From the NCBI RefSeq assembly GCF_030028105.1, contig NC_092382.1, positions 100,766,699 to 100,830,698 of the forward strand: 64,000 nucleotides of DNA. Reading direction: 5' to 3'. Numbering within the stretch: position 1 is the stretch's first letter; every line of letters starts with the position of its first letter. Shown here piece after piece: positions 9,586 through 64,000 of the stretch. This stretch comes from Mobula birostris. Its lineage: Eukaryota. Below the pieces are notes generated by a model. That model saw only the letters and a program-made list of their open reading frames with translations, made no database searches and was not told where the DNA came from. Position numbers and translations under genes: made by a program.

Positions 9586-9623
<38 letters not shown>

Positions 9624-11423: not shown

Positions 11424-11473
11424 CTAAAACGACCAGCTTTGTCCCGGCTCCGAAGTATGCTTCGTAAGCATTA
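11424..11473 (-). CDS. TRBJ: TCR beta J gene segment (NAYEAYFGAGTKLVVL-G)
   Basis: EAYFGAGTKLVVL; donor GTAAG at 11423-11419. RSS CACACCT (11474-11480), 12 bp, CTCTAAACA. Confidence 0.93.
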
Positions 11474-12212: not shown

Positions 12213-12262
12213 CTAAAACGACCAGTTTCGTCCCGTCGCCGAAGTAGGCTTCATCGTAATTA
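12213..12262 (-). CDS. TRBJ: TCR beta J gene segment (NYDEAYFGDGTKLVVL-G)
   Basis: EAYFGDGTKLVVL; donor GTAAG at 12212-12208. RSS CACACCG (12263-12269), 12 bp, CTCCAAACA. Confidence 0.93.
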
Positions 12263-12905: not shown

Positions 12906-12955
12906 CTAAGACGACCAGTTTGGTCCCGCTGCCGAAAAGCTGCGGATTGTTGTTA
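12906..12955 (-). CDS. TRBJ: TCR beta J gene segment (NNNPQLFGSGTKLVVL-G)
   Basis: FGSGTKLVVL; donor GTGAG at 12905-12901. RSS CACGGCG (12956-12962), 12 bp, TTCAAAACC (12975-12983). Confidence 0.95.
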
Positions 12956-13279
12956 CACGGCGGGCGCAGCCTGTTTCAAAACCAGCCCTCGTTCTTTCTC
13001 GCCGCGTCTACGCAGCCGCGTTCACCACCTCCCACCACATAGAATAATAGACTGAAACAACATGGAAGCGGGCCCTCTATTCCACCCGCCCCACTTCTCC
13101 CCCTTTCCCTGTCCATTCTACCCTTTCTCTCTCTCTCTTTCTCCTCTTATCATTTCATAAAAAGAAAAAAAATAAAGAAACTTTCTTAACTATATATATA
13201 TAAGAACCCCACTATTCTCCATAAACAAAAACAAAAGGTAAAAAAAAAGAAAAAGGATAAAAAAAGGACTGGGCAGCCC

Positions 13280-13870
13280 ATAGAAACCATAGAAACTACA
13301 GCACAGAAGCAGGCCTTTTGGCCCTTCTTGGCTGTGCCGAACCATTTTCTGCCTAGTCCCACTGACCAGCACACGGACCATATCCCTCCATACACCTCCC
13401 ATCCATGTATCTGTCCAATTTATTCTTAAATGTTAAAAAAGAACCCGCATTTACCACCTCGTCTGGCAGCTCATTCCATACTCCCACCACTCTCTGTGTG
13501 AAGAAGCCCCCCCTAATATTCCCTTTAAACTTTTCTCCCCTCACCCTTAACCCATGTCCTCCGGTTTTTTTCTCCCCTTGCCTCAGTGGAAAAAGCCTGC
13601 TTGCATTCACTCTATCTATACCCATCATAATTTTATATACCCCTATCAAATCTCCCCTCATTCTTCTACAGGGAATAAAGTCCTAACCTATTCAACCTTT
13701 CTCTGTAACTGAGTTTCTCAAGTCCCAGCAACATCCTTGTAAACCTTCTCTGCACTCTTTCAACCTTATTTATATCCTTCCTGTAATCTGGCGACCAAAA
13801 CTGAACACATAACTCCAGATTCGGCCTCATCAATGCCTTATACAACCTCATCATAACATTCCAGCTCTTA
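13280..13870 (-). mobile_element. CR1 LINE 3' fragment
   Basis: ORFs 13666-13914 and 13353-13661; close to the copy at 2960-3570 but in the opposite orientation. Confidence 0.9.
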
Positions 13871-13919
13871 TACTCAATAATTATACTCGATATACTCAAT
13901 AAGCCCATACTCACAGTAA

Positions 13920-14300
13920 AAGCAAGAAGAAAGAAAAAACTTCCTGATCAAACCCAAGGTTTCGAGAAAGTAACTGGAAGAGCAATAAATCAAACCATAT
14001 GAAAATATTGAACAAAAGTTCGCCAGGTTTCTTCAAGCTTAAAGGATGTATCAAATGTCCTACTCCTCATTTTCTCGCAACGTAGACAGGACATAATGGA
14101 GGAAAGCCAATAAAAAACAGTAGGTGGATTAGAACCCTTCCAGTTAAGCAAAGTGGCTCTCCTACTCAGTAAAGTTGTAAAATCTATCATCCGTTGAGCG
14201 GAAACAGGAATATATCCTGCTTCCGTTGGAATGATCCCAAGAATTGCTGTAAATAAATTCGGTTGTAGGTCCAAATTCAAAACTTTTGAGAAAAGTTTTT
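13920..14300 (-). mobile_element. L1/Tx1-type LINE ORF2 C-terminal fragment
   Basis: ORF 13990-14280 (LLSRRATLLNWK..PPT..WLSSIMSCLRCEK...WRTFVQYF) resembles fish L1 ORF2 ends. Confidence 0.7.
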
Positions 14301-14718
14301 AAAGAAATCTTTCAACAAAATTATCTATCCTTTCATTTTGTCTCCACCCCTGTCTTCACTCCTTTCCTCTTCTTCCCCTTTCCCTACTCCAATTTCTTCT
14401 TCTTCCCCGTTCTATCTCTCTTCTTTCTCGATCCACTCCCTCCTCTCTCCCTCTCTCTTCCCTCTCTCCTGCCTCCCCTCTCCTGTTCTCTCTCTCTTCC
14501 GCATCTCCCCTCCGCTATGCTTTTCCCTCCAGCCCTCTTCTATTTCTCTCCACTGCTCCTCTCTATGTTGCCGTCCCTCTTCCTCACAGGGGACCTCTCC
14601 CGTATCCCCTGCTCTCTTCGTGGAAACGATATCTGATCTTCCCTGCGTGTCCGTCCCATTACCCCCCCCCCCGCAGCCCAAATAAAATGGACTCAGCTCT
14701 AGAAACCAACCGACTCAC

Positions 14719-14768
14719 CGAGGTCGACCAGTTTGGTCCCGCTGCCGAATTACTGCTCGGTGTTGGTG
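14719..14768 (-). pseudogene. TRBJ: TCR beta J pseudogene (TNTEQ*FGSGTKLVDL-G)
   Basis: In-frame TAA where Y is expected before FGSGT; donor GTGAG intact. The heptamer position reads CATCTCC and runs into a CT tract with no nonamer. Confidence 0.9.
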
Positions 14769-15181
14769 CATCTCCCTTCTTCTCTCTCTCTTCTTCTAAT
14801 CGGCTTCCTCTCTCTCCTTACTCCTATTCCTTATCCCTCCCGCTTTATCTCTCCCCCCTCTTCCCTTCCCCTCTCTCCCCTCTGCTCCCATCTTCTCTCT
14901 CCCACTCCTTCTCTCTTCCCCTCCGCACCTCCTCTCAATCCTCTATCCTCTTCTCCCCCCTTCCTCCTTCTGTCTGGCCTCTCTTTCTCCCCCTTCTCCT
15001 CTTCTCCCCTCTGCTGCTCTCTATCTTTCTCTCGCCCTCTCTCCCAGGGAACCTCTCTCGTCCCCTGTCCTCCCTCTGGAGTCGGTCCGAGATCGCTGCT
15101 TTCCCTGGCAACTATCCCCGCTTGTTCGACCCAGTCCCCCTCGACTCAAATGGACTCGGCACCAGCAGCAAAGCGACTCAC

Positions 15182-15231
15182 CTAAGACGACCAGTTTGGT
15201 CCCGCCGCCGAAATACCGCTCGCTGGTAGCA
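15182..15231 (-). CDS. TRBJ: TCR beta J gene segment (ATSERYFGGGTKLVVL-G), the most 5' J seen
   Basis: YFGGGTKLVVL; donor GTGAG at 15181-15177. RSS CACGGCG (15232-15238), 12 bp, TTCAAAACC (15251-15259). Confidence 0.95.
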
Positions 15232-39490: not shown

Positions 39491-40901
39491 CAGTGAAGTG
39501 CGCGTCGGTGCCGGCGATCACCCCACGTCAAGTGCCGCCGTGCTTCGGGTCCACAAGTCACTGACCACAGCCCGCACGTCTTTGGAATGATAGCGGAAAC
39601 CCTGTCTCCAGATTTCTTAAACATCCGCTTCATTTTCCTTCTGCCTCTCCCCCCTCTCTCTCTCTTCTATCTCCCTATCTCTCTGCCTGCCCCTCTCCCT
39701 CTCGACGTCCTCCCTTTGACCTGCTCTCTGTCGCGTTCGGGCTCCATCCTGGTGTATGTCCGTCTTTCTCTCCGTCTGTCCCTCGTGATCTCCCCTTGGT
39801 CACGGTCTCTTTCTTTTTGTCCACCCCAGCAGAGTTAACTTCCACCCCGACTGTCTCTCTCTTTCACTCCTTCTCAGTTGTTCGCTTATTATTTGCTGTC
39901 CATATTTGGCTCCCCGCTTCCCCATATCATTATCGCTCTCTCCTCTCACTTGCTCTCCCATCTTCTGTCTCTCTGTTCTTCCCACGACGTCACTTCCTTT
40001 CCCTCTCTGCTTTTTCCCTCTCACCCCCTTCACCTCTGTCTCATTTGCCCCCTTAGTTTTTCCTTTCCTTCTCACCCCCTTTGGCCACTTTTCAATCTCT
40101 TTCCTGGCCCTTTCCTCCGTTCCTGTCCTTTTCCTTTTCTCTTTTTTCTTCCTTCTTTCATTCTTCCTCTTTGGGATTTTCCATTCTCTCTTACTTTCCG
40201 TCCTCTCACTGTCTTCCTATCTCATCTCTTTATTGACCCACCACTCTCTTTCACTTTCGCACACTCCTCCCTCCCTCCCATTCCCCATCTTCCCCTCTTA
40301 ATTTATTTCTCTCTCCATGCCTTTACCTCTTTTACTCCGACCTCTCTGCCTCCTATTCTTCTGTCCTTTTCACTGAAAACCCACCCACCCTACTATATCT
40401 TTTCCGACGTCTCTGCCTCTTATTTTTCAGTTCTTCTCCCTCAATACCCATCCACCATTCTGTATCTTTCCCTGCTCTCTCTCCCTCTGTCGTTCTGTCC
40501 TCTTCTCTCCCTCGCTCTCTCGGTCTCTCTCTCTCACTCACTGTTTCTCTCCCCCCTCACTCCCTCCCTGTCTCNNNNNNNNNNNNNNNNNNNNNNNNNN
40601 NNNNNNNNNNNNNNNNNNNNNNNNNNNNNNNNNNNNNNNNNNNNNNNNNNNNNNNNNNNNNNNNNNNNNNNNNNNNNNNNNNNNNNNNNNNNNNNNNNNN
40701 NNNNNNNNNNNNNNNNNNNNNNNNNNNNNNNNNNNNNNNNNNNNNNNNNNNNNNNNNNNNNATCCACTTCTTTCATCCAGTCTATCTTTTGAATACAAAG
40801 GTATGTGGCGATTTAGGGGCCATGACCAGCACAGTCACGTTGGGCGGGAGGGTCTTTTCCTCTCCCTCACGACATTTCTCTGCATTTCCCTGCATTCCCG
40901 G

Positions 40902-41435: not shown

Positions 41436-41483
<48 letters not shown>

Positions 41484-42401: not shown

Positions 42402-42580
42402 CCCCTTCCTCTTTTTTTTCCCGTCCCTCCCTACCACACTTCCGTGTTCCTTGCCGAGTTGATCGCACTCCGTTCAACGTGGAATGAGCTTCCTGGAAAC
42501 CGCTAACCATCCTTCCCCCCCACCCCCCCAACCATTACGTTGACTGCAGTCCAGGAGGCGAGCTGAGAGCGCGGGAGAGG

Positions 42581-42619
42581 GGTTCTTGACACAGCGAGTT
42601 ACGGGAGCGTGTCGCTGTG
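42581..42619 (-). promoter_or_regulatory. 23-bp-spacer recombination signal sequence of the V segment
   Basis: CACAGCG (42619-42613), 23 bp, TCAAGAACC (42589-42581). Confidence 0.92.
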
Positions 42620-42924
42620 TCCCACACTAGTAGCGCAGTAGTACAGCGCCGTGTCTGTAGGCTGCGCGGTCTCTGTCTTCAGCAGACACGTCTTCCTGCC
42701 AGGCCGCTCCGCTTTAAAGCCCGACTGGAACTCCGGCTCGTAGGTGGGCTGGCTCCCGGACACGCTCACCACCATAAGGCGAGGACCGCTCCCGGTGTCG
42801 TATCGGTACCAGTACATATAGTTATGGTCTGTGTCGTTCTGATGGCACGTGAGAGTGGCGAGCGACCCTCGCTCGGTCGTCAACCGTCCGGGAAACTGCG
42901 AGATGAGCGCGTACCCTCCGTGAC
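42620..42924 (-). CDS. TRBV: TCR beta V exon, open frame (GHGGYALISQFPG...TLTCHQNDTDHNYMYWYR...DTALYYCATSVG)
   Basis: Acceptor TTTCTCTCTCTAG, phase 1. Conserved Cys, WYR and DxAxYYC, followed by an intact RSS. CHQ..HNYMYWYR is characteristic of TRBV. Confidence 0.95.
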
Positions 42925-43664
42925 CTAGAGAGAGAAACCCGGCAAAGTGCAAGATTAGTTAGCGGCGGGTCCGCATCCCGCGCCGAGCATCTGCCATTCT
43001 TAATGTACCTGTCTCGACAACTCCTTCTGGCAGCTCCTTCCACAGACAGACTACCCGTATCCCTCTAAACCTTTCCTGTCCGTGTCCCTGTCCCAGTGTC
43101 GTTAACGTACCCGCCTTGACCACTTCCTCTGGCAAGTCCTTCCATAGACGGGCCACCCTCTGGGTGAAAAAGTCACCCCTTGGTTCTTTAGTAAATGCCT
43201 CTCCGCTCTTAGTTTAAACCTCTGCCCTCTAGATTTCGACTCCATGACCATGGGGAAAAACACTTCGCGCATTCACCCTGTCTATGGCATAAATTCGTTC
43301 ATACTCCAAACAAAAATAACCTCTCCTGCCCAGTCTCCTTTTATTACGCAGGGCTTCGAGCCCCGTCGGCATCCATGCAAATATTTCCGACTTCCTACAG
43401 AAGGACGAAACATAAACTGGACACAAAATTCCTGGTCACAGAGAAATTCAATTTAAGGTAAAAAACTGCAGTTAAATTCAGAACAACTGAAATTCATTTC
43501 AAGCGCGGCGTCTTTAAAGTGGGTGTCGTTGTAAACGATAAACAGCGTATTAAAACTTCAACAATAAAGTGCGTCGGAAGTCGCCGAAAAGGGAAATCAT
43601 AAATATTAGTGGATTTGAAGGTGGTATTTGTACAAGCTTTCAGGCCTGAAGTGAATGTACTCAC

Positions 43665-44041: not shown

Positions 44042-44122
<81 letters not shown>

Positions 44123-44368: not shown

Positions 44369-45930
44369 GAAGAGAGAGAGAAAGGAAGCGATCGGGGCGC
44401 TGGGCCCCAAAGTCTGGACGTCGCTTTGCAGGTTTGGCAGAGGAAACGAAGCAGGGTGTTTGGGGGTGGGGTGTGCAGGTAGCTTGAGGAAGTTAGGAGG
44501 CTCCGGAAGGAAGTGCGAAAGAGGGAGACAAGGAGGGGAGGAAAGAGAGAAGGGCGGACATACACTGGGATGGAGAATAAAGGCGGTTGAGAGCAAGCCA
44601 AAGGGAGGCAGACGAGAGGGAGAAGGAGGGGTGCAGAGAGACAGATGGGGGAGAGAGAGAGAGAGAGATAGATGGATAGATGTAGAGAGAGAGAGAGAGA
44701 AGTGCGTTTTGGCTAGGCCGTGTTTTGTATTGTGTGCAGGTCCGGTCGCCCCATTAAAACGAAGGACAGAGCAGTACTTGGGATGGACACGGAAGAGGTT
44801 ACTGACTGGATTGGAGAGCGGTTTCTCTCAGGAGTACTGTAATAAACCTGGGCAATCACTGATCCGCCCCTCTGAGATTAAATCATTTGGTCACGTGTAC
44901 ATCTCTTTGTATTTCTTGGCGTGTGCCTGCGTGCGTGCGAGTCTGCGTGTCCGTTGGTTTTTCCAAAGCAGAGCGAGAGAGAGAGACTGTGTGTCGCGCC
45001 GCTCCTCACACAGACATTTTCGCAGTATTTTCCCTGTGTTTTACGAGGTCGAGTTGCGGTCTCGGCACTCAACCCGGCACGGATGCGAAGATTGCTCGGG
45101 GCCGGGCCCGACCGGTCTCGAACCCGAGTACCTCCGCTCCCGGGTCCGGCGCCGATGTCGTTGCGCCACCAGCCGGCCCACCACGTGTACATCTTAACTT
45201 TGAAACGTGAGATGCGATTGGCTCGCCGCCATTCAACACGCAGAGGCGAATCCGCGCGGCCGAGGACGCGAGAACGTGCCGAAAGCGCCCTGATCTGGCC
45301 CCGTGCGACGGAGTCGGCGCAGGAATTTCAGACGCAGATGAGAACTTAGGTGCTGGAATCTCAGCGTGTGGGGCACGATTAATGCCGTCTGGCCCTGAAC
45401 AGGAGGACGGCACACGGTGGCGAAACTGGTGTGTGTGTGTGTGTGTGTGTGTGAAAGAGAGAGAGAGAGAGAATTTGCAGTATTCTCCCTCGGGTTAACA
45501 CCCCGTCAGCTCCTAAAGCAGCTGAGGAAAGAGACGAGATTTCGAAGAACAGGTTTACCAGGCCGTCGCCTGGCTTGGAGGGCTTTCATTTTGGAGAGAG
45601 ATTATATAGGCTGAAACGAAGGAGGCCAAGGGGCTCTGGATATTTTTGTATGGTGGTAATTTTGTCACTTACCAAGATGGAGCGAAAAGCTTGTCTTGCA
45701 TACTGACCACTCAGATCATATTAGAGCAAGGGAAAACATGGACAGGAAAGGTTTAGAGGGATATGGTGGTCCGTCTGTGGAAGGAGCTGCCGGGAGAAGC
45801 AGTCGAGGCAGGTACGTTAACGACACTCGGACAGAAAAACGGATAGGAAAGGTTTCGAGGGATACGCAGGGCCTCTCTCCATTCTCTTTGACCCAGTAAC
45901 CGAGGCGGAATCCTTTGCCCCCTCCCACAG

Positions 45931-46062
45931 CCCCCACCGTAGCCGACCTTTCCACCTCGGAGACCTGGGCCGAGGAATTCCTGGCCACCGAGACCACCCT
46001 GGACACCCCGCAGGGCTACGCCGCCACTGATTGGTCGGAGGATTTTATCACCGAGGCGACAG
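45931..46062 (+). CDS. PEX5: Single internal exon of a PEX5 (peroxin 5, PTS1 receptor) homolog
   Basis: Acceptor CCCTCCCACAG and donor GTGAGG; 132 nt, open frame: PTVADLSTSETWAEEFLATETTLDTPQGYAATDWSEDFITEAT. It aligns without gaps to recalled human [43 protein letters not shown], including both WxxxF motifs. Confidence 0.88.
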
Positions 46063-47339
46063 GTGAGGGGGCTGGGCTGGCTCATTGTGGGAGGAAAGGA
46101 GATTGACCAATGGGCTATTGGGGACGGGATGGGATTGGCCAATGGGCTGTTGGGGACGGAACGGGATTGACCAATGGGCTATTGGGGATGGAAGGAGATA
46201 CAGTTCTTTTTCTCCTTAGGGTCGGGGAATCAAGATCCAGTGGGCACAACTTAAAGGTGAGAGGGAAGAGAATTGGACACAAAGGTGTATTTGTGGAAGG
46301 ACCTGCCGGGGTAGAAGTGGTCGAGGTAGGTACATTAATAACACTCGGATAGGGACACTGATTGGAAAGGTTTAAGGAATACGGTGGTCCATCTGTGGAA
46401 GGATCAGCATGAGGCGGGGTGTGAGGCCAGGAATCCATCTTCTGACAAAAGAGAATCTGAAACAACTGTAATGGACAAGATTAACGAGAGACACGGATAA
46501 CGTGTTCTGTTTACGCCCATCACCCCTACTGGCATATAGGCTCCCGAAAGCAGCTCTCTCGTCATCTGTCCTGGTCCAGTCATTTCAGGCTGTCCCCCAG
46601 ATGACTGATCCGACGTCTCCCGGGTATTAGATCTTCGGAGAGATCCTACCTCTCCCAGGAATAGGGTCTTTGGAGATTCTGTTGACGCCTCTTTACCGCT
46701 GGGTTTATACGGCCCCAGGCCCAGCCCTTCTCCTTTCTTAGCCATACATGGCGGAGCTCATGTGATGATGGGGTTATGAAATAACGCGGGAAAGCCGAGA
46801 AGAAGGGGCTTCGAAAGGAATTTGAGTTTCTGGAGGAGCTGGTGGAGTCAGATATCAAGTCCGGTCACCGCATTACAGCGAGGAGGTAGCAGTTCTGGAG
46901 AGGACACGGAAGAAGTTTGTTGACAGGGGAACTTGAATAAATCTGGACGATGATTAACGTCCCACCATAGGTCGAAATGCAATCCAACTCACCAATCCAA
47001 CCGGTAATCTTTGGCAAGTGGGAGGGGAATGGAGCATCCAGAGGAAGCCGACGCGGCCACGGGGAGAACGTACAAGCTCCCTGCGAACGGCTCCTTACAG
47101 GAAACTTACGCAGGCTTTGCACAGAGGGCAGAAGAAGGGCTTTAGACCATTAGACATAGATATAGTATTAGTTCACACGACCCATCGAGCCTGCTCCGGT
47201 ATTCCATCAAGGCTGCTATATAATCCCCCTCAACCCCATCCTCTTACATTGTACCTGTAACTTTTGATACCCTGACTTATCAAGAACATATCGATCTCCG
47301 GTTTACATGTACCCAATGACAGCATCCACGCCCGTCTGT

Positions 47340-50060: not shown

Positions 50061-50383
50061 CACCTGTGATCTATCTGTATTCTACCTCACTGTTCCGTGC
50101 CCACCCGTTNNNNNNNNNNNNNNNNNNNNNNNNNNNNNNNNNNNNNNNNNNNNNNNNNNNNNNNNNNNNNNNNNNNNNNNNNNNNNNNNNNNNNNNNNNN
50201 NNNNNNNNNNNNNNNNNNNNNNNNNNNNNNNNNNNNNNNNNNNNNNNNNNNNNNNNNNNCTGCGCAGATGTCCCGGGCTGGAGGCTTGGGCGGCGTGGGA
50301 GGGGGTGGTGGGCGGTGGGGGCGGTGTTGAGGGGAGATGGGGAGTGCGTGTGTCATTGAGAGAGAAAGTGAGTGAGTGTGTGC

Positions 50384-50436: not shown

Positions 50437-51754
50437 TACGTATGTGAGAGAGATCAAGGGAATAAGGGAGTTATGTGTTATGGAAAAAGAAGAGAAGATC
50501 AGTAGAGGGAAATATTAGATTTGATTAGGTTATGAGGGCAAGCGGTCCTCTTTTATTGTTATTTAGTAATGCATGCGTTAAGAAATGATACAGTATTCCT
50601 CCGGTGTGATATCACAGAAACACAGGACAGAGCAAGACTGAAAAACTAACAAAAACACATAATTATAACATATAGTTACAACAGTGCAACAATACTATAA
50701 CTTGACGAAGAACAGGCCATGGTACAGTAAAAAAGTGCAAAGTTTCTCGGAAGTCCCAATCTCACGCAAACGGGAGAAGGATGAAAACTCTCCCTGCCAT
50801 GCCCGACCACACTCCGACTCTGAGTCGTCCGAAAACTTCGAGCTGCGGTTAGCCCTCCGACACCGAGTACCGAGCACCATCTCTGCCGAACGCTCCGACC
50901 GCAGCCTCGGTCGCCAGCAGCAGGCAAAGCCGGGGATTTTGGGGCCTTCCTCCGGAGTTTCTCGATTGCACAGCAGCAGCGGCTGGAAACAACTTTCCTG
51001 CCTCTATCTTATCTGTCCCTTTCATAATTTCACATATTACTATATTATCTGTCTGTGATCTACACAGGTTTGTGCGAAAGTCTTAGGCTCGTGTCAGCAC
51101 AAATTCTAATCTCACTGAATGGCGGAGCATCTCGATTGGCCTGTTTCTATTTTTAATGTTCTATTGAATAAATAACCTACCAGTTAATTTCTTTTATATA
51201 TATACATAAAACTGCAGTTTTAAAGGCATAGGGTGGTCACGCCAAATATTGATTTCATTTTAAAGTTTACCGCTCTTAATAGTAATTTTATTTTTAGATT
51301 CAGAAACGTTTCCTTTCATTGCTTTTTTTGTTTTATAGAATTCGTCCTTTCACGGGCCTAAGACTTTGGCACAGTCCTATTTCCGTCACAGACAGCATGG
51401 GTGTCAACGTAGGTGGGCTCCTGTCAGAGGCCCACAAGTCCCGGACCTCCAGCCGGAGACAGTCCCATCGACTGTGAGACATCGGAGCAGGATAAGGCCG
51501 AGCGGCCCGTCGAGTCTGTTCCGCCGTTCCATCATGGCTGATTTACTATCCCTCTCGACCCCGTTCTCCAGACTTCTTCCTGTAACCTTTGACCAATGAA
51601 GAAACAATCAACCTCCGAATTTAAATGCACCGAAGACTTGGCCTCCACATACGTCTGTGTCAATGAATTCGACAGATTCACCCACCCTTCAGCTAAAGAA
51701 ATTCCTCCTCATCTCCGTCCTAAATGGACGTCCCACTATTTTCAGGCTGTGAAC

Positions 51755-54700
51755 TCTGATGCTACAATCCCCCACTGCAGGAAACATCCTCTCCACATCC
51801 ACTCTATCTGTGTCCTCTGGTTCTAGACTCTCCCCACTACAGGAAACATCCTCTCCACATCCACTCTATCTGTGTCCTCTGGTCCTCGACTCCCCCACCA
51901 TAGGAAACATCCTCTCCACATCCCCTCTATCTGTGTCCTCTGGTTCCAGACTCCACCACTGTAGGAAACATCCTCTCCACATCCACTCTATCAGTGTCCT
52001 CTAGTCCCAGACTAGCCCACTATAGAAAACAGCCTCTCCACATCCACTCTATCTGTATCCTCTGGTTCTAGACTCTCCCCACTACAGGAAACATCCTCTC
52101 CACATCCACTCTATCTGTGTCCTCTGGTCCTAGACTCCCCCTCTACAGGAAACATCCTCTCCACTTCCACTCTATCTGTTTCCTCTGGTCCCAGACTCCC
52201 CCACTATAGGAAACATCCTCTCCACATCCACTCTATCTGTGTCCTCTGGTTCTAGACTCTTCCCACTACAGGAAACATCCTCTCCACATCCACTCTATCT
52301 GTGTCCTCTGGTCCTCGACTCCCCCACCATAGGAAACATCCTCTCCACATCCCCTCTATCTGTGTCCTCTGGTCCCAGACTCCCCCACTGTAGGAAACAT
52401 CCTCTCCACATCCACTCTATCTGTGTCCTCTGGTCCCAGACTAGCCCACTATAGGAAAAATCCTCTCCACATCCACTCTATCTGTATCCTCTGGTTCTAG
52501 ACTCTCCCCACTACAGGAAACATCCTCTCCACATCCACTCTATCTATGTCCTCTGGTCCTAGACTCCCCCACTACGGGAAGAATCGTCTCCACATCCCCT
52601 CTATCTGTGTCTTCTGGTCCTAGACTCCCCCACCACAGGAAACATCCCCTCTACATCCACTCTATATGTGCCCTCTGGTCCTAGATACCCCACTACAGGA
52701 ACCATGCTCTCCACATCCACTCTATCTGTGTCCTCTGGTCCTAGACTCCCCCTAGTACAGGAAACATCCTCTCCGCATCCACTCTATCTGTGCCCTCTGA
52801 TACCAGTATCCCCCACTACAGGAACCATCCTCTCCACATCCAACCTATCTGCGTCCTCTGGCCCTAGACTCATCCGACTACAAGAAACATCCTCTCCACA
52901 TCCACTCTATCTGTGTCCTCTGGTCCTAGACTCCCCCTCTACAGGAAACATCCTCTCCACTTCCACTCTATCTGTTTCCTCTGGTCCCAGACTCCTCCAC
53001 TATAGGAAACATCCTATCCACATCCACTCTATCTGTGTCCTCTGGTCCCAGACTTCCCCGACTACAGGAAACATCCTCCCCACATCCACTCTATCTGAGT
53101 CCTCTGGTCCGAGACTCCCCCAGTACAGGAAACATCCTCTCCAAATCCACTCTACCTGTGTCCTCTGGTCTTAGACTCCCCCCACTACAGCAATCATCCT
53201 CTCCGCATCCACTCTATCTGTGCCCTCTGGTCCTGGACTCCCCCACGACAGGAAACATCCTCTCCTCATCCACTCTATCTGTGTCCTCCGGTCCTAGACT
53301 CCCCCACTACAGGAAACGTCGTCTCCACATCCACTCTATCTGTGTCCTCTGGTCCTAGACTCACCACTACAGGAAACATCGCCTCCACATCCACTCTATC
53401 TGAGTCCTCTGGTCCTAGACTCCCCCACCACAGGAAACATCCCCTCTACATCCACTCTATATGTGCCCTCTGGTCCTAGGTTCCCCCACTACAGGAACCA
53501 TGCTCTCCACATCCACTCTATCTGTGTCCTCTGGTCCTAGACTCCCCCAAGTACAGGAAACATCCTCTCCGCATCCACTCTATCTGGGCCCTCTGATACC
53601 AGAATCCCCCACTACAGGAAACATCCTCTCCACATCCAATCTATCTGCGTCCTCTGGTCCTAGACTCCGCCGACTACAGGAAACATCCCCTCTACATCCA
53701 CTCTATCTGTGTCCTCTGGTCCTAGATTCCCCCACAACAGGAACCATCCTCTGCACATCCACTCTATCTGTGTCCGCTGGTCCCAGACTCCCCCACGACA
53801 GGAAACATCCCCTCTCATCCACTCCATCTGTGCCCTCTGATACAGAATCCCCCACTACAGGAAACATCCTCTCCGCATCCTCTCTATCTGAGTCCTCTGG
53901 TCCGAGACTCCCCCAGTACAGGAAACATCCTCTCCAAATCCACTCTACCTGTGTCCTCTGGTCTTAGACTCCCCCCACTACAGCAAACATCCTCTCCGCA
54001 TCCACTCTATCTGTGCCCTCTGATACCAGACTCCCGCACTACAGGAAACATCCTCTCGGCATCCACTCTACCTTTGTCGTCTGGTCCGAGGCTCCCCCAC
54101 TACAGGAAACATCCTCTCCGCATCCACTCTATCTGTGTCCTCTGGTCCTAGACTCCCCCACTACAGGAAACATTCTCTCCACATCCACACCATCTGAGTT
54201 TTCTGGTTCTAAACTCCCCCCAACTATAGGAATCATCCTCTCCACATCCACTCTATCTGTGTCCTCTGGTCCTAGACTGCCCCCACTATAGGAAACATCC
54301 TTTCCACATCCACTCTATCTGTGTCCTCTGGTCCTAGACTCCCCCACAATAGGAAACATCCTCTCCACATCCACTCTATCTGTGCCCTCTGGTCCGAGAC
54401 TCCCCTCCACTACAGGAAACAACCTCTCCACATCCTCTCTATCTGTGTCCTCTTGTCCTAGACTCCCCACTACAGTAAACATCCTCTCCACATCGACTCC
54501 ATCTCTGTCCTGTAGTCCTAGATTCCACCACTATAGGAACCATCCTCTCCAAATCCATACTATCTGTGTCCTCTGGTCCAAGACTCCCCCACTACAAGAA
54601 ACATCCTTTCCACATCCACTCTATCTGTGTCCTCTAGTCCTAGACTTCCCCATAATAGGAAACATCCTCTCCACATCCACTCTATCTGTGTCCTCTGGAC

Positions 54701-57700
54701 CTAGACTCCCCCACTACAGGAAACACCCCCTCCACATCCACTCTATCTGTGTCCTCTGGTCCCAGACTCCCCCACTACAGGAAACATCCTCTCCACATCC
54801 AATCTATCTGTGTCCTCTGGTCCTAGACTCCGCCGACTACAGGAAACATCCTCTCCACATCCACTCTATCTGTGTCCTCTGGTCCTAGATTCCCCAACCA
54901 TAGTAAACATCCTCTCCACGTCCTCTCTAACTGTGTCCTTTGGTCCTAGATTCCCCACTACAGTAAACATCATCTCCACATCCACACCATCTGTGTCCTC
55001 TGGTCCTAGACTCCCACAGTACAGGAAACATCCTCTCCAAATCCACTCTACCTGTGTCCTCTGGTCTTAGACTCCCCCCACTACAGGAAACTTCCTCTCC
55101 GCATCCACTCTATCTGAGCCCTCTGATACCAGACTCCCGCACTACAGGAAACATCCTCTCGGCATCCACTCTACCTTTGTCCTCTGGTCCGAGGCTCCCC
55201 AACTACAGGAAACATCCTCTCCGCATCCACTCTATCTGTGTCCTCTGGTCCTAGACACCCCACTACAGGAAACATCCTCTCCACATCCACACTATCTGAG
55301 TTTTCTGGTTCTAAACTCCCCCCAACTATAGGAATCACCCTCTCCACATCCACTCTATCTGTGTCCTCTGGTCCCAGACTCCCCCCTACTATAGGAAACA
55401 TCCTCTCCAAATCCATACTAACTGTGTCCTCTGGACCTAGCCTCCCCCACCATAGGAAACATCCTCTCCACATCTACTCTATCTGTGTCCTCTGGTCCCA
55501 GACTCCCCCACTACAAGAAACATGCTCTCCACATCCAATCTATCTGTGTCCTCTGGTCCTAGACTTCCCCGACTACAGGAAACAACCTCTCCACATCCTC
55601 TCTATCTGTGTCCTCTTGTCCTAGACTCCCCACTACAGTAAACATCCTCTCCACATCGACTCCATCTCTGTCCTGTAGTCCTAGATTCCACCACTATAGG
55701 AACCATCCTCTCCAAATCCATACTATCTGTGTCCTCTGGTCCAAGACTCCCCCACTACAAGAAACATCCTTTCCACATCCACTCTATCTGTGTCCTCTAG
55801 TCCTAGACTTCCCCATAATAGGAAACATCCTCTCCACATCCACTCTATCTGTGTCCTCTGGACCTAGACTCCCCCACTACAGGAAACACCCCCTCCACAT
55901 CCACTCTATCTGTGTCCTCTGGTCCCAGACTCCCCCACTACAGGAAACATCCTCTCCACATCCAATCTATCTGTGTCCTCTGGTCCTAGACTCCGCCGAC
56001 TACAGGAAACATCCTCTCCACATCCACTCTATCTGTGTCCTCTGGTCCTAGATTCCCCAACCATAGTAAACATCCTCTCCACGTCCTCTCTAACTGTGTC
56101 CTTTGGTCCTAGATTCCCCACTACAGTAAACATCATCTCCACATCCACACCATCTGTGTCCTCTGGTCCTAGACTCCCACAGTACAGGAAACATCCTCTC
56201 CAAATCCACTCTACCTGTGTCCTCTGGTCTTAGACTCCCCCCACTACAGGAAACTTCCTCTCCGCATCCACTCTATCTGAGCCCTCTGATACCAGACTCC
56301 CGCACTACAGGAAACATCCTCTCGGCATCCACTCTACCTTTGTCCTCTGGTCCGAGGCTCCCCAACTACAGGAAACATCCTCTCCGCATCCACTCTATCT
56401 GTGTCCTCTGGTCCTAGACACCCCACTACAGGAAACATCCTCTCCACATCCACACTATCTGAGTTTTCTGGTTCTAAACTCCCCCCAACTATAGGAATCA
56501 CCCTCTCCACATCCACTCTATCTGTGTCCTCTGGTCCCAGACTCCCCCCTACTATAGGAAACATCCTCTCCAAATCCATACTAACTGTGTCCTCTGGACC
56601 TAGCCTCCCCCACCATAGGAAACATCCTCTCCACATCTACTCTATCTGTGTCCTCTGGTCCCAGACTCCCCCACTACAAGAAACATGCTCTCCACATCCA
56701 ATCTATCTGTGTCCTCTGGTCCTAGACTTCCCCGACTACAGGAAACATCCTCCCCACATCCACTCTATCTGTGTCCTCTGGACCTAGACTCCCCAACTAC
56801 ACGAAACATCCCCTCCACATCCACTCTATCTGTGTCCTCTGGTTCCAGACTCCCCTACTGCAGGAAACATCCTCTCCACATCCAATCTATCTGTGTCCTC
56901 TGGTCCTAGACTCCGCCGACTACAGGAAACATCCTCTCCACATCCACTCTTTCTGTGTCCTCTAGTCCTAGACTCCCCCACCATAGTAAACATCCTCTCC
57001 ACGTCCTCTCTAACTGTGTCCTTTGGTCCTAGATTCCCCACTACAGTAAACATCCTCTCCACATCCACTCTATCTGTGTCCTCTGGTCCTAGACTCCCCG
57101 ACTACTGGAAACATTGTCTCCACATCCCCTCTATCTGTGTCCTCTGGTCCTAGACTCCCCCACCACAGGAAACATCCCCTCTACATCCACTCTATCTGTG
57201 CCCTCTGGTCCTAGATTTGCCCACTACATGAACCATGCTCTCCACATCCACTCTATCTGTGTCCTCTGGTCCTAGACTCCCCCACTACTGGAAAAATCGT
57301 CTCCACATCCCCTCTATCTGTGTCCTCTGGTCCTAGACTCCCCACTACAGGAAACATCCTCTCCGCATCCACTCCATCTGTGCCCTCTGATACCAGAATC
57401 CCCCACTACAGGTAACATCCTCTCCACATCCAATCTATCTGCGTCCTCAGGTCCTAGATTCCCCCACTACAGGAACCATTCTCTGCACATTCACTCTATC
57501 TGTGTCCGCTGGTCCTAGACTCCCCCACTACAGGAAACATCCCCTCTCATCCACTCTATCTGTGCCCTCTGATACAGAATCTCCCAAGACAGGAAACATC
57601 CTCTCCGCATCCTCTCTATCTGTGTCCTCTGGTCCGAGACTCCTCCAGTACAGGAAACATCCTCTCCAAATCCACTCTACCTGTGTCCTCTGGTCATAGA

Positions 57701-60700
57701 CTCCCCCCACTACAGGAAACATCCTCTCCACATCCACTCTATCTGAGTTTTCTGGTCCTAAACTCCCCCCAACTATAGGAAACATCCTCTCCACATCCAC
57801 TCTATCTGTGTCCTCTGGTCCTAGACTCCCCCCCACTATAGGAAACGTCGTCTCCACATCCACTCTATCTGTGTCCTCTGGTCCTAGACTCCCCGCTACA
57901 GGAAACATCCTCTCCGCATCCACTCTATCTTTGCCCTCTGATACCAGAATCCCCCACTACAGGAAACATCCTCTCCACATCCAATCTATCTGCGTCCTCT
58001 GGTCCTAGTTTCCCCCACTACAGGAACCATCCTCTGCACATCCACTCTATCTGTGTCCGCTGGTCCTAGATTCCACCACTATAGGAACCATCCTCTCCAA
58101 ATCCATACTAACTGTGTCCTCTGGACCTAGCCTCCCCCACCATAGGAAACATCCTCTCCACATCTACTCTATCTGTGTCCTCTGGTCCCAGACTCCCCCA
58201 CTACAAGAAACATCCTCTCCACATCCAATCTATCTGTGTCCTCTGGTCCTAGACTTCCCCGACTACTGGAAACATCCTCCCCACATCCACTCTGTCTGTT
58301 TCCTCTGGACCTAGACTCCCCCACTACAGGAAACATCCCCTCCACATCCACTCTATCTGTGTCCTCTGGTCCTAGACTACCCCACCATAGTAAACATCCT
58401 CTCCACGTCCTCTCTAACTGTGTCCTTTGGTCCAAGATTCCCCACTACAGAAAACATCCTCTCCACATCCACACCATCTGTGCCCTCTGGTCCTAGACTC
58501 CCCCACTACCGGAAACGTCGTCTCCACATCCACTCTATCTGTGTCCTCTGGTCCTAGACTCCCCCACTACAGGAAACATCGTCTCCACATCCCCTCTATC
58601 TGTGTCCTCTGGTCCAAGACTCCCCCACCACAGGAAACATCCCCTCTACATCCGCTCTATCTGTGCCCTCTGGTCCTAGTTTCCCCCACTACAGGAACCA
58701 TCCTCTGCACATCCACTCTATCTGTGTCCGCTGGTCCTAGATTCCACCACTATAGGAACCATCCTCTCCAAATCCATACTAACTGTGTCCTCTGGACCTA
58801 GCCTCCCCCACCATAGGAAACATCCTCTCCACATCTACTCTATCTGTGTCCTCTGGTCCCAGACTCCCCCACTACAAGAAACATCCTCTCCACATCCAAT
58901 CTATCTGTGTCCTCTGGTCCTAGACCTCCCCGACTACAGGAAACATCCTCCCCACATCCAATCTGCCTGTTTCCTCTGGACCTAGACTCCCCCACTACAG
59001 GAAACATCCCCTCCACATCCACTCTATCTGTGTCCTCTGGTCCTAGACTCCCCCACCATAGTAAACATCCTCTCCACGTCCTCTCTAACTGTGTCCTTTG
59101 GTCCAAGATTCCCCACTACAGAAAACATCCTCTCCACATCCACACCATCTGTGCCCTCTGGTCCTAGACTCCCCCACTACAGGAAACGTCGTCTCCACAT
59201 CCACTCTATCTGTGTCCTCTGGTCCTAGACTCCCCCACTACAGGAAACATCGTCTCCACATCCCCTCTATCTGTGTCCTCTGGTCCAAGACTCCCCCACC
59301 ACAGGAAACATCCCCTCTACATCCGCTCTATCTGTGCCCTCTGGTCCTAGATTCCCCCACTACATGAACCATTCTCTCCACATCCACTCTATCTGTGTCC
59401 TCTGGTCCTCGACTCCCCCCAGTACAGGAAACATCCTCTCCGCATCCACTCTATCTGTGCACTCTGATACCTGAATCCCCCACTACAGAAAATATCCTCT
59501 CCACATCCAATCTATCTGCGTCCTCTGGTCCTAGACTCCGCCGACTACAGGAAACATCCCCTCTACATCCACTCTATCTGTGTCCTCTGGTTCTAGATTC
59601 CCCCACTACAGGAACCATCCTCTGCACATCCACTCTATCTGTGTCCGCTGGTCCTAGGCTCCCCCACTACAGGAAACATCCCCTCTCATCCACTCTATCT
59701 GTGCCCTCTGATACAGAATCCCCCACTACAGGAAATATCCTCTCCACATCTTCCCTATCTGTGTCCTCTGGTCCGAGACTCCCCCAGTACAGGAAACATC
59801 CACTCCAAATCCACTCTACCTGTGTCCTCTGGTCTTAGACTCCCCCCACTACAGGAAACATCCTCGCCGCATCCACTCTATCTGTGCCCTCTGATACCAG
59901 ACTCCCGCACTACAGGAAACATCCTCTCGGCATCCACTCTACCTATGTGCTCTGGTCCGAGACTCCCCCACTACAGGAAACATCCTCTCCACGTCCTCTC
60001 TAACTGTGTCCTTTGGTCCTAAACTCCACACTACAGTAAACATCCTCTCCACATCCACTCCATCTGTGTCCTGTAGTCCTAGATTCCACCACTATAGGAA
60101 CCATCCTCTCCAAATCCATACTAACTGTGTCCTCTGGACCTAGCCTCCCCCACCATAGGAAACATCCTCTCCACATCTACTCTATCTGTGTCCTCTGGTC
60201 CCAGACTTCCCCACTACAAGAAAAATCCTCTCCACATCCAATCTATCTGTGTCCTCTGGTCCTAGACTCCCCTCCACTACAGGAAACCTCCTCTCCACAT
60301 CTACTCTATCTGTGTCCTCTGGTCCCAGACTCCCCCACTACAAGAAACATCATCTCATGTTCAATCTATCTGTGTCCTCTGGTCCTAGACTTCCCCGACT
60401 ACAGGAAACATCCTCTCCACATCCACTCTATCTGTGTCCTCTGGTCCTAGACTCCCCCTCCATAGGAAACATCCTCTCCACATCCACTCTATCTGTGCCC
60501 TCTGGTCCTAGACTCCCCTCCACTACAGGAAACATCCTCTCCACATCTACTCTATCTGTGTCCTTTGGTCCTAGATTCCCCACTACAGTAAACATCCTCT
60601 CCACATCCACACCATCTGTGTCTTCTGGTCCTAGACTTCCCCACTACAGGAAACGTCGTCTCCACATCCACTCTATCTGTGTCCTCTGGTCCTAGACTCC

Positions 60701-63700
60701 CCACTACAGGAAACATCCTCTCCGCATCCACTCTATCTGTGCCCTCTGATACCAGAATCCCGCACTACAGGAAACATCCTCTCCACATCCAATCTATCTG
60801 CGTCCTCTGGTCCTAGATACCCCCACTACAGGAAATATCCTCTCCAAATCCACTCTACCTGTGTCCTCTGGTCTTAGACTCCCCCCACTACAGTAAACAT
60901 CCTCTCCGCATCCACTCTATCAGTGCCCTCTGATACCAGACTCCCGCACTACAGGAAACATCCTCTCGGCATCCACTCTACCTTTGTCCTCTGGTCCGAG
61001 ACTCCTCCACTGCAGGAAACATCCTCTCCGCATCCACTCTATCTGTGTCCTCTGGTCCGAGACTCCCCCACTACAGGAAACATCCTCTCCACATCCACTC
61101 TATCTGAGTTTTCTGGTCCTAAACTCCCCCCAACTATAGGAAACATCCTCTCCACATCCACTCTATCTGTGTCCTCTGGTCCTAGACTCCCCCCCACTAT
61201 AGGAAACATCCTCTCCACATCCACTCTATCTGTGTCCTCTGGTCCTAGACTCCCCCCCACTATAGGAAACGTCGTCTCCACATCCACTCTATCTGCGTCC
61301 TCTGGTCCTAGACTCCCCACTACAGGAAACATCCTCTCCGGATCCACTCTATCTTTGCCCTCTGATACCAGAATCCCCCACTACAGGAAACATCCTCTCC
61401 ACATCCAATCTATCTGCGTCCTCTGGTCCTAGATTCCCCCACTACAGGAACCATCCTCTGCACATCCACTCTATCTGTGTCCGCTGGTCCTAGATTCCAC
61501 CACTATAGGAACCATCCTCTCCAAATCCATACTAACTGTGTCCTCTGGACCTAGCCTCCCCCACCATAGGAAACATCCTCTCCACATCTACTCTATCTGT
61601 GTCCTCTGGTCCCAGACTCCCCCACTACAAGAAACATCCTCTCCACATCCAATCTATCTGTGTCCTCTGGTCCTAGACTTCTCCGACTACAGGAAACATC
61701 CTCTCCACATCTACTCTATCTGTGTCCTCTGGACCTAGACTCCCCCACTACAGGAAACATCCCCTCCACATCCACTCTATCTGTGTCCTCTGGTCCTAGA
61801 CTCCCCCACCGTAGTAAACATACTCTCCACGTCCTCTCCAACTGTGTCCTTTGGTCCTAGATTCCCCACTACAGTAAACATCCTCTCCACATCCACACCA
61901 TCTGTGTCCTCTGGTCCTAGACTCCCACACTACAGGAAACGACGTCTCCACATCCACTCTATCTGTGTCCTCTGGTCCTAGACTCCCTCACTACAGGAAA
62001 CATCGTCTCCACATCCCCTCTATCTGTGTCCTCTGGTCCTAGACTCCCCCACCACAGGAAACATCCTCTCCGCATCCACTCTAACTGTGCCCTCTGATAC
62101 CAGAATCCCCCACTACAGGAAACATCCTCTCCACATCCAATCTATCTGCGTCCTCTGGTCCTAGATTCCCGCCCTACAGGAAATATCCTCTCCAAATCCA
62201 CTCTACCTGTGTCCTCTGGTCTTAGACTCCCCCCACTACAGTAAACATCCTCTCCGCATCCACTCTACCTTTGTCCTCTGGTCCGAGACTCCTCCACTAC
62301 AGGAAACATCCTCTCCGCATCCACTCTATCTGAGTTTTCTGGTCCTAAACTCCCCCCAACTATAGGAAACATCCTCTCCACATCCACTCTATCTGTGTCC
62401 TCTGGTCCTAGACTCCCCCCCACTATAGGAAACATCCTCTCCACATCCACTCTATCTGGGTCCTCTGGTCCTAGACTACCCACAATAGGAAACATCCTCT
62501 CCACATCCACTCTATATGTGTCCTCTGGTCCTAGACTCCCCTCCACTACAGGAAGCAACCTCTCCACATCCACTCTATCTGTGTCCTCTTGTCCTAGATT
62601 CCCGCACTACAGTAAACATCCTCTCCACATCCACTCCATCTGTGTCCTGTAGTCCTAGATTCCACCACTATAGGAACCATCCTCTCCAAATACATACTAA
62701 CTGTGTCCTCTGGACCTAGCCTCCCCCACCATAGGAAACATCCTCTCCACATCTACTCTATCTGTGTCCTCTGGTCCCAGACTCCCCCACTACAAGAAAC
62801 ATCCTCTCCACATCCAATCTATCTGTGTCCTCTGGTCCTAGACTTCCCCAACTACAGGAAACATCCTCCCCACATCCACTCTATCTGTGTCCAATGGACC
62901 TAGACTCCCCCACTACAGGAAACATCCCCTCCACATCCACTCCATCTGTGTCCTCTGGTCCCAGACTCCCCTACTGCATGAAACATCCTCTCCACATCCA
63001 ATCTATCTGTGTCCTCTGGTCCTAGACTCCGCCAACTACAGGAAACATCCTCTCCACATCCACTCTATCTGTGTCCTCTGGTCCTAGACTCCCCCACCAT
63101 AGCAAATATCCTCTCCACGTCCTCTCTAACTGTGTCCTTTGGTCCTAGATTCCCCACTACAGTAAACATCCTCTCCACATCCACACCATCTGTGTCCTCT
63201 GGTCCTAGACTCCCCCACTACAGGAAACGTCGTCTCCACATCAACTCTATCTGTGTCCTCTGGTCCTAGACTCCCCCACTACTGGAAACATCGTCTCCAC
63301 ATCCCCTCTATCTGTGTCCTCTGTTCCTAGACTCCCCCACCACAGGAAACATCCCCTCTACATCCACTCTATCTGTGCCCTCTGGTCCTAGATTCCCCCA
63401 CTACATGAACCATGCTCTCCACATCCACTCTATCTGTGTCCTCTGGTCCTAGACTCCCCAACTACTGGAAAAATCGTCTCCACATCCCCTCTATCTGTGT
63501 TCTCTGGTCCTAGACTCCCCACTACAGGAAACATCCTCTCCGCATCCACTCTATCTGTGTCCGCTGGCCCTAGACTCCCCCACTACAGGAAACATCCCCT
63601 CTCATCCACTCTATCTGTGCCCTCTGATACAGAATCTGCCACTACAGGAAACATCATCTCCGCATCCTCTCTATCTGTGTCGTCTGGTCCGAGACTCCCC

Positions 63701-64000
63701 CAGTAGAGGAAACATCCTCTCCAAATCCACTCTACCTGTGTCCTCTGGTCTTAGACTCCCCCCACTACAGTAAACATCCTCTCCGCATCCACTCTATCTG
63801 TGTCCTCTGATACCAGACTCCCGCACTACAGGAAACATCCTCTCGGCATCCACTCTACCTTTGTCCTCTGGTCCGATACTCCCCCACTACAGGAAACATC
63901 CTCTCCACATCCACTCTATCTGAGTTTTCTGGTCCTAAACTCCCCCCAACTATAGGAAACATCCTCTCCACATCCACTCTATCTGTGTCCTCTGGTCCTA
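51755..64000. repeat. 61-bp satellite (~200 copies, runs off the window end) derived from a CR1 RT segment
   Basis: Unit CTATCTGTGTCCTCTGGTCCTAGACTCCCCCACTACAGGAAACATCCTCTCCACATCCACT. The reverse strand encodes DRVDVERMFPVVGESRTRGH, seen in dispersed CR1 copies in this window (e.g. DRVDVAKLFPMMGESSTRGH in ORF 32364-32786). Confidence 0.95.

What the first reader, a model, noticed from the sequence alone, without database searches (positions are those of the whole stretch)
45931..46062. Intact PEX5 exon lying antisense within the TCR beta V array
A splice-competent, open 132-nt exon encoding two PEX14-binding WxxxF motifs lies between V segments at 42.6 and 49.8 kb. I found no other PEX5 exon in the readable 64 kb. 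Either V segments (possibly more of the TRB locus) are nested in very long PEX5 introns with neighbouring exons in gaps or outside the window, or a PEX5 fragment was captured by segmental duplication. A housekeeping gene interleaved with a RAG-rearranged locus would lose this exon on alleles that use a more distal V. I know of no description of this arrangement.
Basis: partly seen in the sequence, partly recalled or inferred. Interest (0 to 1): 0.8.

Follow-up and report, generated by a model that had tools for sequence, protein, structure and literature searches.

The report
Stray PEX5 exon copy in TCR-beta locus
A single exon of the housekeeping peroxisome-import gene PEX5, splice sites included, lies 3 kb from a T-cell-receptor beta V segment in this ray, but the animal's PEX5 mRNA carries a slightly different version of that exon, so this is most likely a silent duplicated gene fragment and not a housekeeping gene interleaved with a rearranging locus.

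Summary
Window 45931-46062 on the + strand is a 132-nt open exon with AG/GT borders. It encodes two WxxxF motifs (WAEEF, WSEDF) and is PEX5 by homology. Its length and phase match the same exon in a shark PEX5 gene. It lies opposite in strand to a TRBV segment with a 23-RSS at 42.6 kb and to a TRBJ cluster at 6-15 kb. The "V at 49.8 kb" could not be confirmed.

The exciting reading is not supported. PEX5 mRNA contigs from organism A use an exon with exactly these borders, then continue into PEX5 flanking exons that are absent from the readable window. They fit this copy with 4-5 mismatches, including Val in the mRNA versus Leu here. All five RNA runs checked by words hold only 3 of 11 (or about 4 of 81) sampled 31-mers, and none holds the window version. 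DNA from the assembly's own sample shows only the window version. The copy also carries Ser and Asp where about 160 vertebrate PEX5 proteins always have Ala and Glu. No other PEX5 exon is readable in 64 kb.

Best reading (about 0.6): an unprocessed, untranscribed duplicated PEX5 fragment.

Open points: the expressed version was not seen in the DNA contigs, and N runs 5.2 kb upstream and 4 kb downstream could hide neighbouring exons.

Interest is low to moderate.

The parts
45931..46062 (+). PEX5-derived exon copy, 132 nt, codon phase from 45933. Encodes two WxxxF PEX14-binding motifs (WAEEF, WSEDF). Has Leu at 45999-46001 where the mRNA has Val.
   Evidence: RNA contigs fit 45929-46062 with 4-5 mismatches
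45905..45930 (+). Intact 3' splice site: pyrimidine-rich tract ending in CACAG.
   Evidence: the mRNA junction falls here
46063..46071 (+). Intact 5' splice site: GTGAGGGGG.
   Evidence: the mRNA junction falls at 46062
45736..45866 (+). Left copy of a dispersed repeat of about 100-130 nt (called R here), 65 nt upstream of the exon. Very abundant in DNA and RNA contigs.
46284..46408 (+). Right copy of repeat R, in direct orientation, about 220 nt downstream of the exon.
46079..46193 (+). 32-nt tandem repeat (3.5 copies) in the downstream intron-like flank.
42997..43157 (-). Third copy of repeat R, inverted, immediately upstream of the V exon.
42626..42925 (-). TRBV-type V exon (V-set, ends YYCATS), 3 kb from the PEX5 exon on the opposite strand.
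42575..42625 (-). Recombination signal behind the V: heptamer CACAGCG, spacer of about 23 nt, nonamer CAAGAACCC.
   Evidence: read directly
6249..15212 (-). TRBJ cluster. Six J segments matching FGxGTKLxVLG, each followed by GT. It lies on a different contig from the exon (500-N joins at 16809-17308 and 38065-38564).
40575..40761 (.). 187-N run 5.2 kb upstream of the exon, set in TC-rich low-complexity sequence. Unreadable, so it could hide a neighbouring exon.
50110..50259 (.). 150-N run 4.0 kb downstream of the exon. Unreadable, so it could hide a neighbouring exon.
51747..64000 (.). 61-nt satellite array running to the window's end. A short array of the same unit lies at 47335-47928. It leaves only about 5.7 kb of non-satellite DNA downstream of the exon.

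Best explanation
This is an unprocessed, DNA-level duplicate of one PEX5 exon together with some of its flanking intron. It is lodged in the TCR-beta locus of a ray, on the strand opposite to the V and J segments. The PEX5 gene that makes the mRNA is a different copy somewhere else, and it carries a version of this exon that is about 97% identical. The copy here still has an open frame and good splice sites only because it is young (4 differences in 134 nt). It is already drifting: Leu where the mRNA and other elasmobranchs have Val, and Ser and Asp at two positions that are Ala and Glu in every other vertebrate PEX5 compared. It is not detectably spliced into any transcript and has no function. 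Its deletion in T cells that use a more distal V would cost nothing. Shown: the identity of the exon, its borders, its neighbours, and the mismatch between this copy and the mRNA. Inferred: that a second genomic copy exists, how the duplication happened (possibly between copies of the flanking repeat R, or as part of a larger segmental duplication of a long-intron gene), and that the copy is functionless.
For: 1. RNA contigs of organism A (X13 610 nt, X15 586 nt, X16 1961 nt) fit only 45929-46062 and then run on unlike the window on both sides. Read in frame, the continuations are the PEX5 neighbouring exons (NSRLLRAPQRA before, DPALISPAKW after), identical to Hypanus sabinus PEX5.
2. Those contigs differ from the window at 4-5 of 134 letters and fall in the 95-99% class. 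At 45999 the RNA has G (Val) in all three runs, whereas DNA contigs of the assembly's own sample (X1, X2, X3) have only C (Leu). X15 is logged as the same sample as X1.
3. In the exon-only search, four organism-A RNA runs from different samples (S7, S9, S16, S17) hold only 3 of 11 sampled 31-mers. X15 (S1) held about 4 of 81 words in the wider search. None holds the full exon. One mismatch would leave 0.70 of the words, and four leave about 0.3.
4. Neither mRNA flank (30-mers, up to 3 mismatches) nor any other PEX5 exon is found in the readable 64 kb. In a shark the neighbouring exons lie 2 kb and 1.2 kb away.
5. The copy has Ser and Asp where 161/161 and 160/160 PEX5 sequences have Ala and Glu.
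6. RNA contigs give no cover on the unique flanks: depth is 0 in bin 45367-45563 and at most 0.46 in bin 46352-46548.
7. In Heptranchias, PEX5 sits beside an ING-family gene, and no match to this window's V was found in that 38.6-kb locus.
Against: 1. No DNA contig carrying the RNA version of the exon was laid from X1, X2 or X3. The window version runs unbroken through the exon in all three. If a normally covered second copy sharing 31-mers existed, I would expect to see it or to see the contigs break. The tool warns that holes prove nothing, but this remains unexplained.
2. In the stingray Hypanus sabinus the first 441 codons of PEX5 span more than 130 kb. Missing neighbours within 46 kb upstream and 18 kb downstream is therefore weak evidence in a ray.
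3. N runs at 40575-40761 and 50110-50259 could hide neighbouring exons.
4. Only one of the 4-5 mismatches could be read (45999). The other three lie in the outer 30 nt, where the tool lists none.
5. No PEX5 protein of this species turned up in the protein collection, so a complete PEX5 elsewhere is inferred and not seen.
Confidence: 0.6

Rival explanations
1. It is one exon of a larger second PEX5 copy, either a multi-exon partial duplicate or a whole paralogue with long introns, that overlaps the TCR-beta locus. Its other exons lie under the N runs or outside the window. The copy is silent, or expressed too weakly or too narrowly to appear in contigs.
For: The frame and both splice sites are intact. 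Ray PEX5 can be very long (more than 130 kb in Hypanus), so a segmental duplication could carry widely spaced exons. N runs flank the exon at -5.2 kb and +4.0 kb. Logan contigs drop rare variants, so weak expression cannot be excluded (tool text).
Against: No second PEX5 exon is readable anywhere in 64 kb. The 187-N run sits in TC-rich low-complexity DNA, not in an obvious exon setting. About 5.7 kb downstream the sequence turns into a satellite of more than 12 kb. No organism-A RNA run checked holds the window version. There are two changes at invariant residues.
Confidence: 0.2
2. It is the genuine exon of the only PEX5 gene, whose giant introns hold TCR-beta V (and perhaps J) segments. The RNA/DNA differences would then come from sample or species mislabelling of the RNA runs.
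For: DNA contigs of the assembly's sample show only this version of the exon, and they run through it unbroken. The exon borders are exactly those used in the mRNA. Ray PEX5 has very long introns. PEX5 is poorly assembled or missing in several elasmobranch assemblies.
Against: Five RNA runs labelled organism A, one of them logged as the same sample as the DNA, all carry a version 3-4% different. That is far beyond allelic variation for a coding exon. The RNA keeps the conserved Val while the window has Leu, and the window has Ser and Asp at invariant Ala and Glu. The mRNA's flanking exons are not in the readable window. In a shark, PEX5 lies beside an ING-family gene in a compact locus where no match to this window's V was found.
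Confidence: 0.12
3. The adjacency of the V segment and the PEX5 exon is an assembly artefact: a chimeric join inside repeats, or a misplaced small contig.
For: The region is full of microsatellites, dispersed repeats and satellite. Short DNA contigs support it only piecewise, with breaks at 43829-44130 and 44635-45481 between V and exon. The window contains two 500-N scaffold joins.
Against: V and exon lie on one gap-free stretch (40762-50109) only 3 kb apart, well inside the span of single long reads if the assembly is long-read based. DNA contigs from three runs reproduce the local sequence with 0 mismatches. A misjoin would not explain why the RNA version differs.
Confidence: 0.05

Closest known systems
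PEX5 (PTS1 import receptor), the N-terminal exon carrying the first WxxxF/Y motifs (human residues about 103-146)
   Same: The sequence is homologous (PDB 2W84 peptide, full-length PEX5 P0009, Hypanus PEX5 P0011). It has two WxxxF motifs. Exon length (132 nt) and phase match Heptranchias perlo PEX5, and the borders match the species' own mRNA.
   Different: It stands alone, with no TPR-domain or other PEX5 exon in the readable window. It is not the version found in mRNA. It differs at two residues that are invariant in about 160 PEX5 proteins.
Unprocessed (duplicated) pseudogene fragments and orphon-type segmental duplications
   Same: It keeps intron-exon borders and intron-like flanks, which points to a DNA-level origin. 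Divergence from the expressed copy is small. No transcription of the copy was detected.
   Different: The parent copy and the limits of the duplicated block were not seen. There is no disabling mutation inside the 132 nt, so "pseudo" rests on isolation and lack of expression, not on a broken frame.
Non-TCR genes inside mammalian TRB loci (trypsinogen genes and the DBH-like gene; PMC2685407)
   Same: Unrelated genes or gene pieces lie among TRBV segments, inside DNA that V(D)J joining can delete.
   Different: Those are whole, conserved, syntenic genes. Here there is a single exon of a housekeeping gene, on the opposite strand, and not known from other species' TRB loci. From my own knowledge, ADAM6 in the IGH locus is another whole gene lying in DNA that recombination deletes.
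Processed pseudogenes (retrocopies)
   Same: Both are a stray copy of part of a housekeeping gene.
   Different: A retrocopy would join this exon directly to its mRNA neighbours. Here the mRNA neighbours are absent and AG/GT intron borders are kept.

Membership tests
PEX5 gene (functional exon of the PTS1 receptor gene) | Sequence homology to the PEX5 N-terminal region | tested here: met
   2W84_B E 0.015; phmmer hits are PEX5 N-terminal sequences, including full-length P0009; tblastn E 9e-11; about 77% identity to Hypanus sabinus PEX5 by eye
PEX5 gene (functional exon of the PTS1 receptor gene) | WxxxF/Y pentapeptide motifs (PEX14 binding) | tested here: met
   WAEEF and WSEDF are present. 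The second has Asp where 160/160 PEX5 have Glu.
PEX5 gene (functional exon of the PTS1 receptor gene) | Conserved exon borders and phase | tested here: met
   132 nt and the same phase as L001:18035-18166. The mRNA junctions fall at 45931 and 46062.
PEX5 gene (functional exon of the PTS1 receptor gene) | Colinear neighbouring PEX5 exons, including the TPR domain | tested here: not met
   There is no other PEX5 hit in the readable 64 kb and the mRNA flanks are absent. Caveat: N runs and sequence beyond the window were not testable.
PEX5 gene (functional exon of the PTS1 receptor gene) | This copy is the one spliced into PEX5 mRNA | tested here: not met
   RNA contigs differ at 4-5 of 134 nt. 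RNA has G and DNA has C at 45999. Organism-A RNA runs hold 3 of 11, or about 4 of 81, sampled words.
Unprocessed duplicated gene fragment | Intron-exon structure retained (not a retrocopy) | tested here: met
   AG and GT borders with intron-like flanks
Unprocessed duplicated gene fragment | A separate parent copy exists in the same genome | tested here: inconclusive
   It is implied by the mRNA version, but no DNA contig with that version was laid from X1-X3. The rest of the assembly could not be searched.
TCR beta locus (setting) | V exon with V-set fold and 23-RSS, and a J cluster with the FGxG motif and splice donors, all on one strand | tested here: met
   Only one V was confirmed in the window; the V claimed at 49.8 kb was not.

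The most novel reading that the evidence does not exclude
The ray's real PEX5 gene, or a complete second PEX5 gene, is physically interleaved with the TCR-beta locus. Its other exons would be hidden under the N runs or beyond the window, so that V(D)J deletion in T cells removes part of a peroxisome-import gene. The fact that only the window version appears in the DNA contigs would then be telling the truth, and the RNA version would come from a copy that sequencing covers badly.
Probability: 0.12. Interest if true: 0.7.

Novelty: new member of a known kind. Interest (0 to 1): 0.25.

Why it matters
The evidence points instead to a common by-product of genome turnover in repeat-rich antigen-receptor loci: a stray, silent gene fragment. 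Its practical value is for annotation. The exon should not be chained into a PEX5 model or used to infer PEX5-TRB synteny. It also flags that the true PEX5 of this ray, like PEX5 in several other elasmobranch assemblies, may lie in DNA that is poorly assembled or poorly covered.

Tried and rejected
1. Reading the exon on the - strand gives stops. It is on the + strand, and "antisense" holds only relative to the TCR segments.
2. The language-model atlas search of the 43-aa peptide gave only uninformative short hypothetical clusters, and Pfam has no model for this region.
3. A processed pseudogene is rejected because the splice borders are kept and the mRNA neighbours are absent.
4. A high-copy transposon cargo is rejected because the DNA depth over the exon (about 5 in X1) equals that of neighbouring single-copy stretches.
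5. RNA editing is rejected because the readable difference is C to G.
6. Allelic variation is judged unlikely. A 3-4% difference is present in all five RNA runs, while DNA contigs of the same sample show no second allele.
7. The V at 49.8 kb has no support. An ORF at about 22 kb with a V-like look (YWYR...DSYFCA) has no V-set hit.
8. Rfam finds nothing in 42-51 kb, so repeat R is not a recognisable tRNA or 5S SINE.
9. Attempts to obtain this species' PEX5 protein or gene failed. Three protein searches found no relative closer than Hypanus. Hypanus and Scyliorhinus PEX5 DNA could not be fetched. There is no record for the Carcharodon protein.
10. Earlier scan notes hold nothing on PEX5, and a literature search found no paper linking PEX5 and TRB.

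Full report
**What is in the sequence**

On the + strand, 45931-46062 is a 132-nt stretch open in the frame that starts at 45933. It is preceded by a pyrimidine-rich tract ending in CACAG and followed by GTGAGG. On the - strand it is closed by stops. The peptide (window:45933-46061:+) contains WAEEF and WSEDF.

**Is it PEX5?**

Yes.
- The peptide matches the human PEX5 peptide crystallised with PEX14 (2W84_B, E 0.015).
- An exhaustive phmmer search finds PEX5 N-terminal sequences, including full-length P0009. Related hits carry source names for PEX5 in Hypanus sabinus, Heptranchias perlo, Mustelus asterias and many tetrapods.
- tblastn of P0009 against the window gives one significant hit, at 45930-46061, E 9e-11.
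- In the genomic PEX5 locus of the shark Heptranchias perlo, the same exon (L001:18035-18166) is also 132 nt, in the same phase and with AG/GT borders. Identity is 73.5% at the nucleotide level and 26/43 at the residue level.

The match is far beyond chance.

**Setting**

- A V exon lies on the - strand at 42626-42925. It hits Pfam V-set at E 9e-14, ends in YYCATS, and is followed by a heptamer CACAGCG, a spacer of about 23 nt and a nonamer, the arrangement expected for a V-beta.
- Six J segments with FGxGTKLxVLG and splice donors lie on the - strand at 6.2-15.2 kb.
- Earlier notes of this scan, which I did not test, place TRB V arrays, a D-J-C cluster and further V genes on the same scaffold on both sides of the window, and call the genome a manta-type ray.
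- The V claimed at 49.8 kb could not be confirmed by similarity, Pfam or motif.
- The window has two 500-N joins (16809-17308, 38065-38564) and three irregular N runs of 132, 187 and 150 nt.
- V and exon lie 3 kb apart on one gap-free stretch, 40762-50109.
- The exon sits between two direct copies of a dispersed repeat (45736-45866 and 46284-46408). A third, inverted copy lies just upstream of the V.
- A 61-nt satellite fills 51747-64000.

**Is this copy the working exon?**

RNA contigs of the same organism label (X13 610 nt, X15 586 nt, X16 1961 nt) fit the window only at 45929-46062 and then continue on both sides into sequence unlike the window.

Read in frame, those continuations are NSRLLRAPQRA before the exon and DPALISPAKW after it. 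Both are identical to the neighbouring exons of Hypanus sabinus PEX5.

But the contigs differ from the window at 4 (X13, X16) or 5 (X15) of 134 letters and fall in the 95-99% class.
- The one difference listed is at 45999. It is G in all three RNA runs and C in every DNA contig of the assembly's own sample (X1, X2, X3). X15 is logged as that same sample.
- That base makes Val in the mRNA and Leu in the window. Hypanus and the sharks compared have Val.
- The other three differences must lie within about 30 nt of the exon ends, because the tool appears to list only differences farther than that from a piece's end (my inference from the from_end column).

An independent check comes from the word searches.
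- In an exon-only search, four organism-A RNA runs from four samples each hold only 3 of 11 sampled 31-mers. X15 held about 4 of 81 in the wider search. No run holds the whole exon.
- One mismatch would leave 0.70 of the words. Four mismatches placed as described leave about 0.3.
- RNA contigs give no cover on the unique flanks beside the exon.

**Signs of drift**

I compared the copy with 161 PEX5 sequences. It has Ser where 161/161 have Ala, and Asp (inside the second WxxxF motif) where 160/160 have Glu. Both codons lie in the outer zones where the unlisted mismatches must be. I predict that the mRNA has Ala and Glu there, but this is not shown.

**Neighbouring exons**

Neither mRNA flank (30-mers, up to 3 mismatches) nor any other PEX5 exon is found in the readable window. 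The comparative picture is mixed.
- In Heptranchias the neighbouring exons are 2 kb and 1.2 kb away. PEX5 there lies beside an ING-family gene, and no match to this window's V was found in that locus.
- In Scyliorhinus torazame the whole gene spans 35 kb.
- In the stingray Hypanus sabinus, however, 441 codons span more than 130 kb on a 160-kb unplaced contig. Absence of neighbours is therefore weak evidence in a ray.
- The N runs at -5.2 kb and +4.0 kb cannot be inspected.

**Verdict**

The most likely reading (about 0.6) is an unprocessed duplicate of one PEX5 exon with intron flanks, lying silent in the TRB locus, while the PEX5 mRNA comes from another copy.
- It is not a retrocopy, because the splice borders are kept.
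- It is not a high-copy transposon cargo, because its DNA depth is single-copy.
- The mechanism of duplication is inferred only. It could be repeat-mediated, or part of a larger segmental duplication of a long-intron gene.

**What does not fit**

No DNA contig with the RNA version was laid from three DNA runs of the assembly's sample, and the window version runs unbroken through the exon in all three. A normally covered second copy sharing 31-mers should have shown up or broken those contigs.

Possible reasons are poor coverage of the true PEX5 region or records dropped by the tool's filter. PEX5 sits on small unplaced or truncated contigs in Hypanus, Heptranchias and Mustelus, and no PEX5 of this species was found in the protein collection. 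This keeps three rivals alive:
- a larger second PEX5 copy, about 0.2;
- the genuine, nested PEX5 gene, about 0.12;
- an assembly chimera, about 0.05.

**Comparison with what is known**

Non-TCR genes inside TRB loci are well known in mammals, notably the trypsinogen genes and a DBH-like gene (PMC2685407). Stray gene fragments are common in duplication-prone loci. A literature search found nothing linking PEX5 and TRB. This is a new instance of a known kind, of low to moderate interest unless the whole-genome search named under next steps shows it to be the only copy.

Noticed in passing
window 51747-64000 and 47335-47928: A 61-nt satellite (about 200 copies, 85% alike, with a 184-nt higher-order period) runs to the window's end. 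A 10-copy array of the same unit lies 1.3 kb downstream of the PEX5 exon. It is hugely abundant in both DNA and RNA contigs.
   Followed up: partly
window 45736-45866, 46284-46408, 42997-43157: A dispersed repeat of about 100-130 nt brackets the PEX5 exon in direct orientation and also lies, inverted, just upstream of the V exon. Contig depth over it is in the thousands. There is no Rfam match.
   Followed up: partly
window 42926-43200 (- strand): No leader exon is evident in the roughly 250 nt upstream of the V exon, which are occupied by the dispersed repeat. The V may therefore be a pseudogene, or its leader may lie further away.
   Followed up: no
window 6249-15212 (- strand): Six J segments have near-identical cores (FGxGTKLxVLG). 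Pairs of them share the same flanking letters (for example 12217 and 11428, or 12910 and 15186), which suggests recent tandem duplication inside the J cluster.
   Followed up: no
window 7024-7155, 40575-40761, 50110-50259: Three N runs have irregular lengths (132, 187 and 150 nt), unlike the two 500-N scaffold joins. Two of them flank the PEX5 exon.
   Followed up: no
PEX5 loci of other elasmobranchs: PEX5 is truncated or sits on small unplaced contigs in Hypanus sabinus (160 kb, gene over 130 kb), Heptranchias perlo (77 kb, flagged low quality) and Mustelus asterias (13.9 kb, 102 aa). In Scyliorhinus torazame the complete gene spans 35 kb on a 114-kb contig. The gene seems to sit in hard-to-assemble DNA in this group.
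   Followed up: partly
window 27550-28502, 32364-32786, 36962-37384, 48854-49120, 49391-49636: Several fragments of LINE reverse-transcriptase ORFs lie on both strands between the TCR segments.
   Followed up: no
window 188-947: A 70-nt tandem repeat (10.8 copies, 89% alike) lies at the left edge of the window.
   Followed up: no
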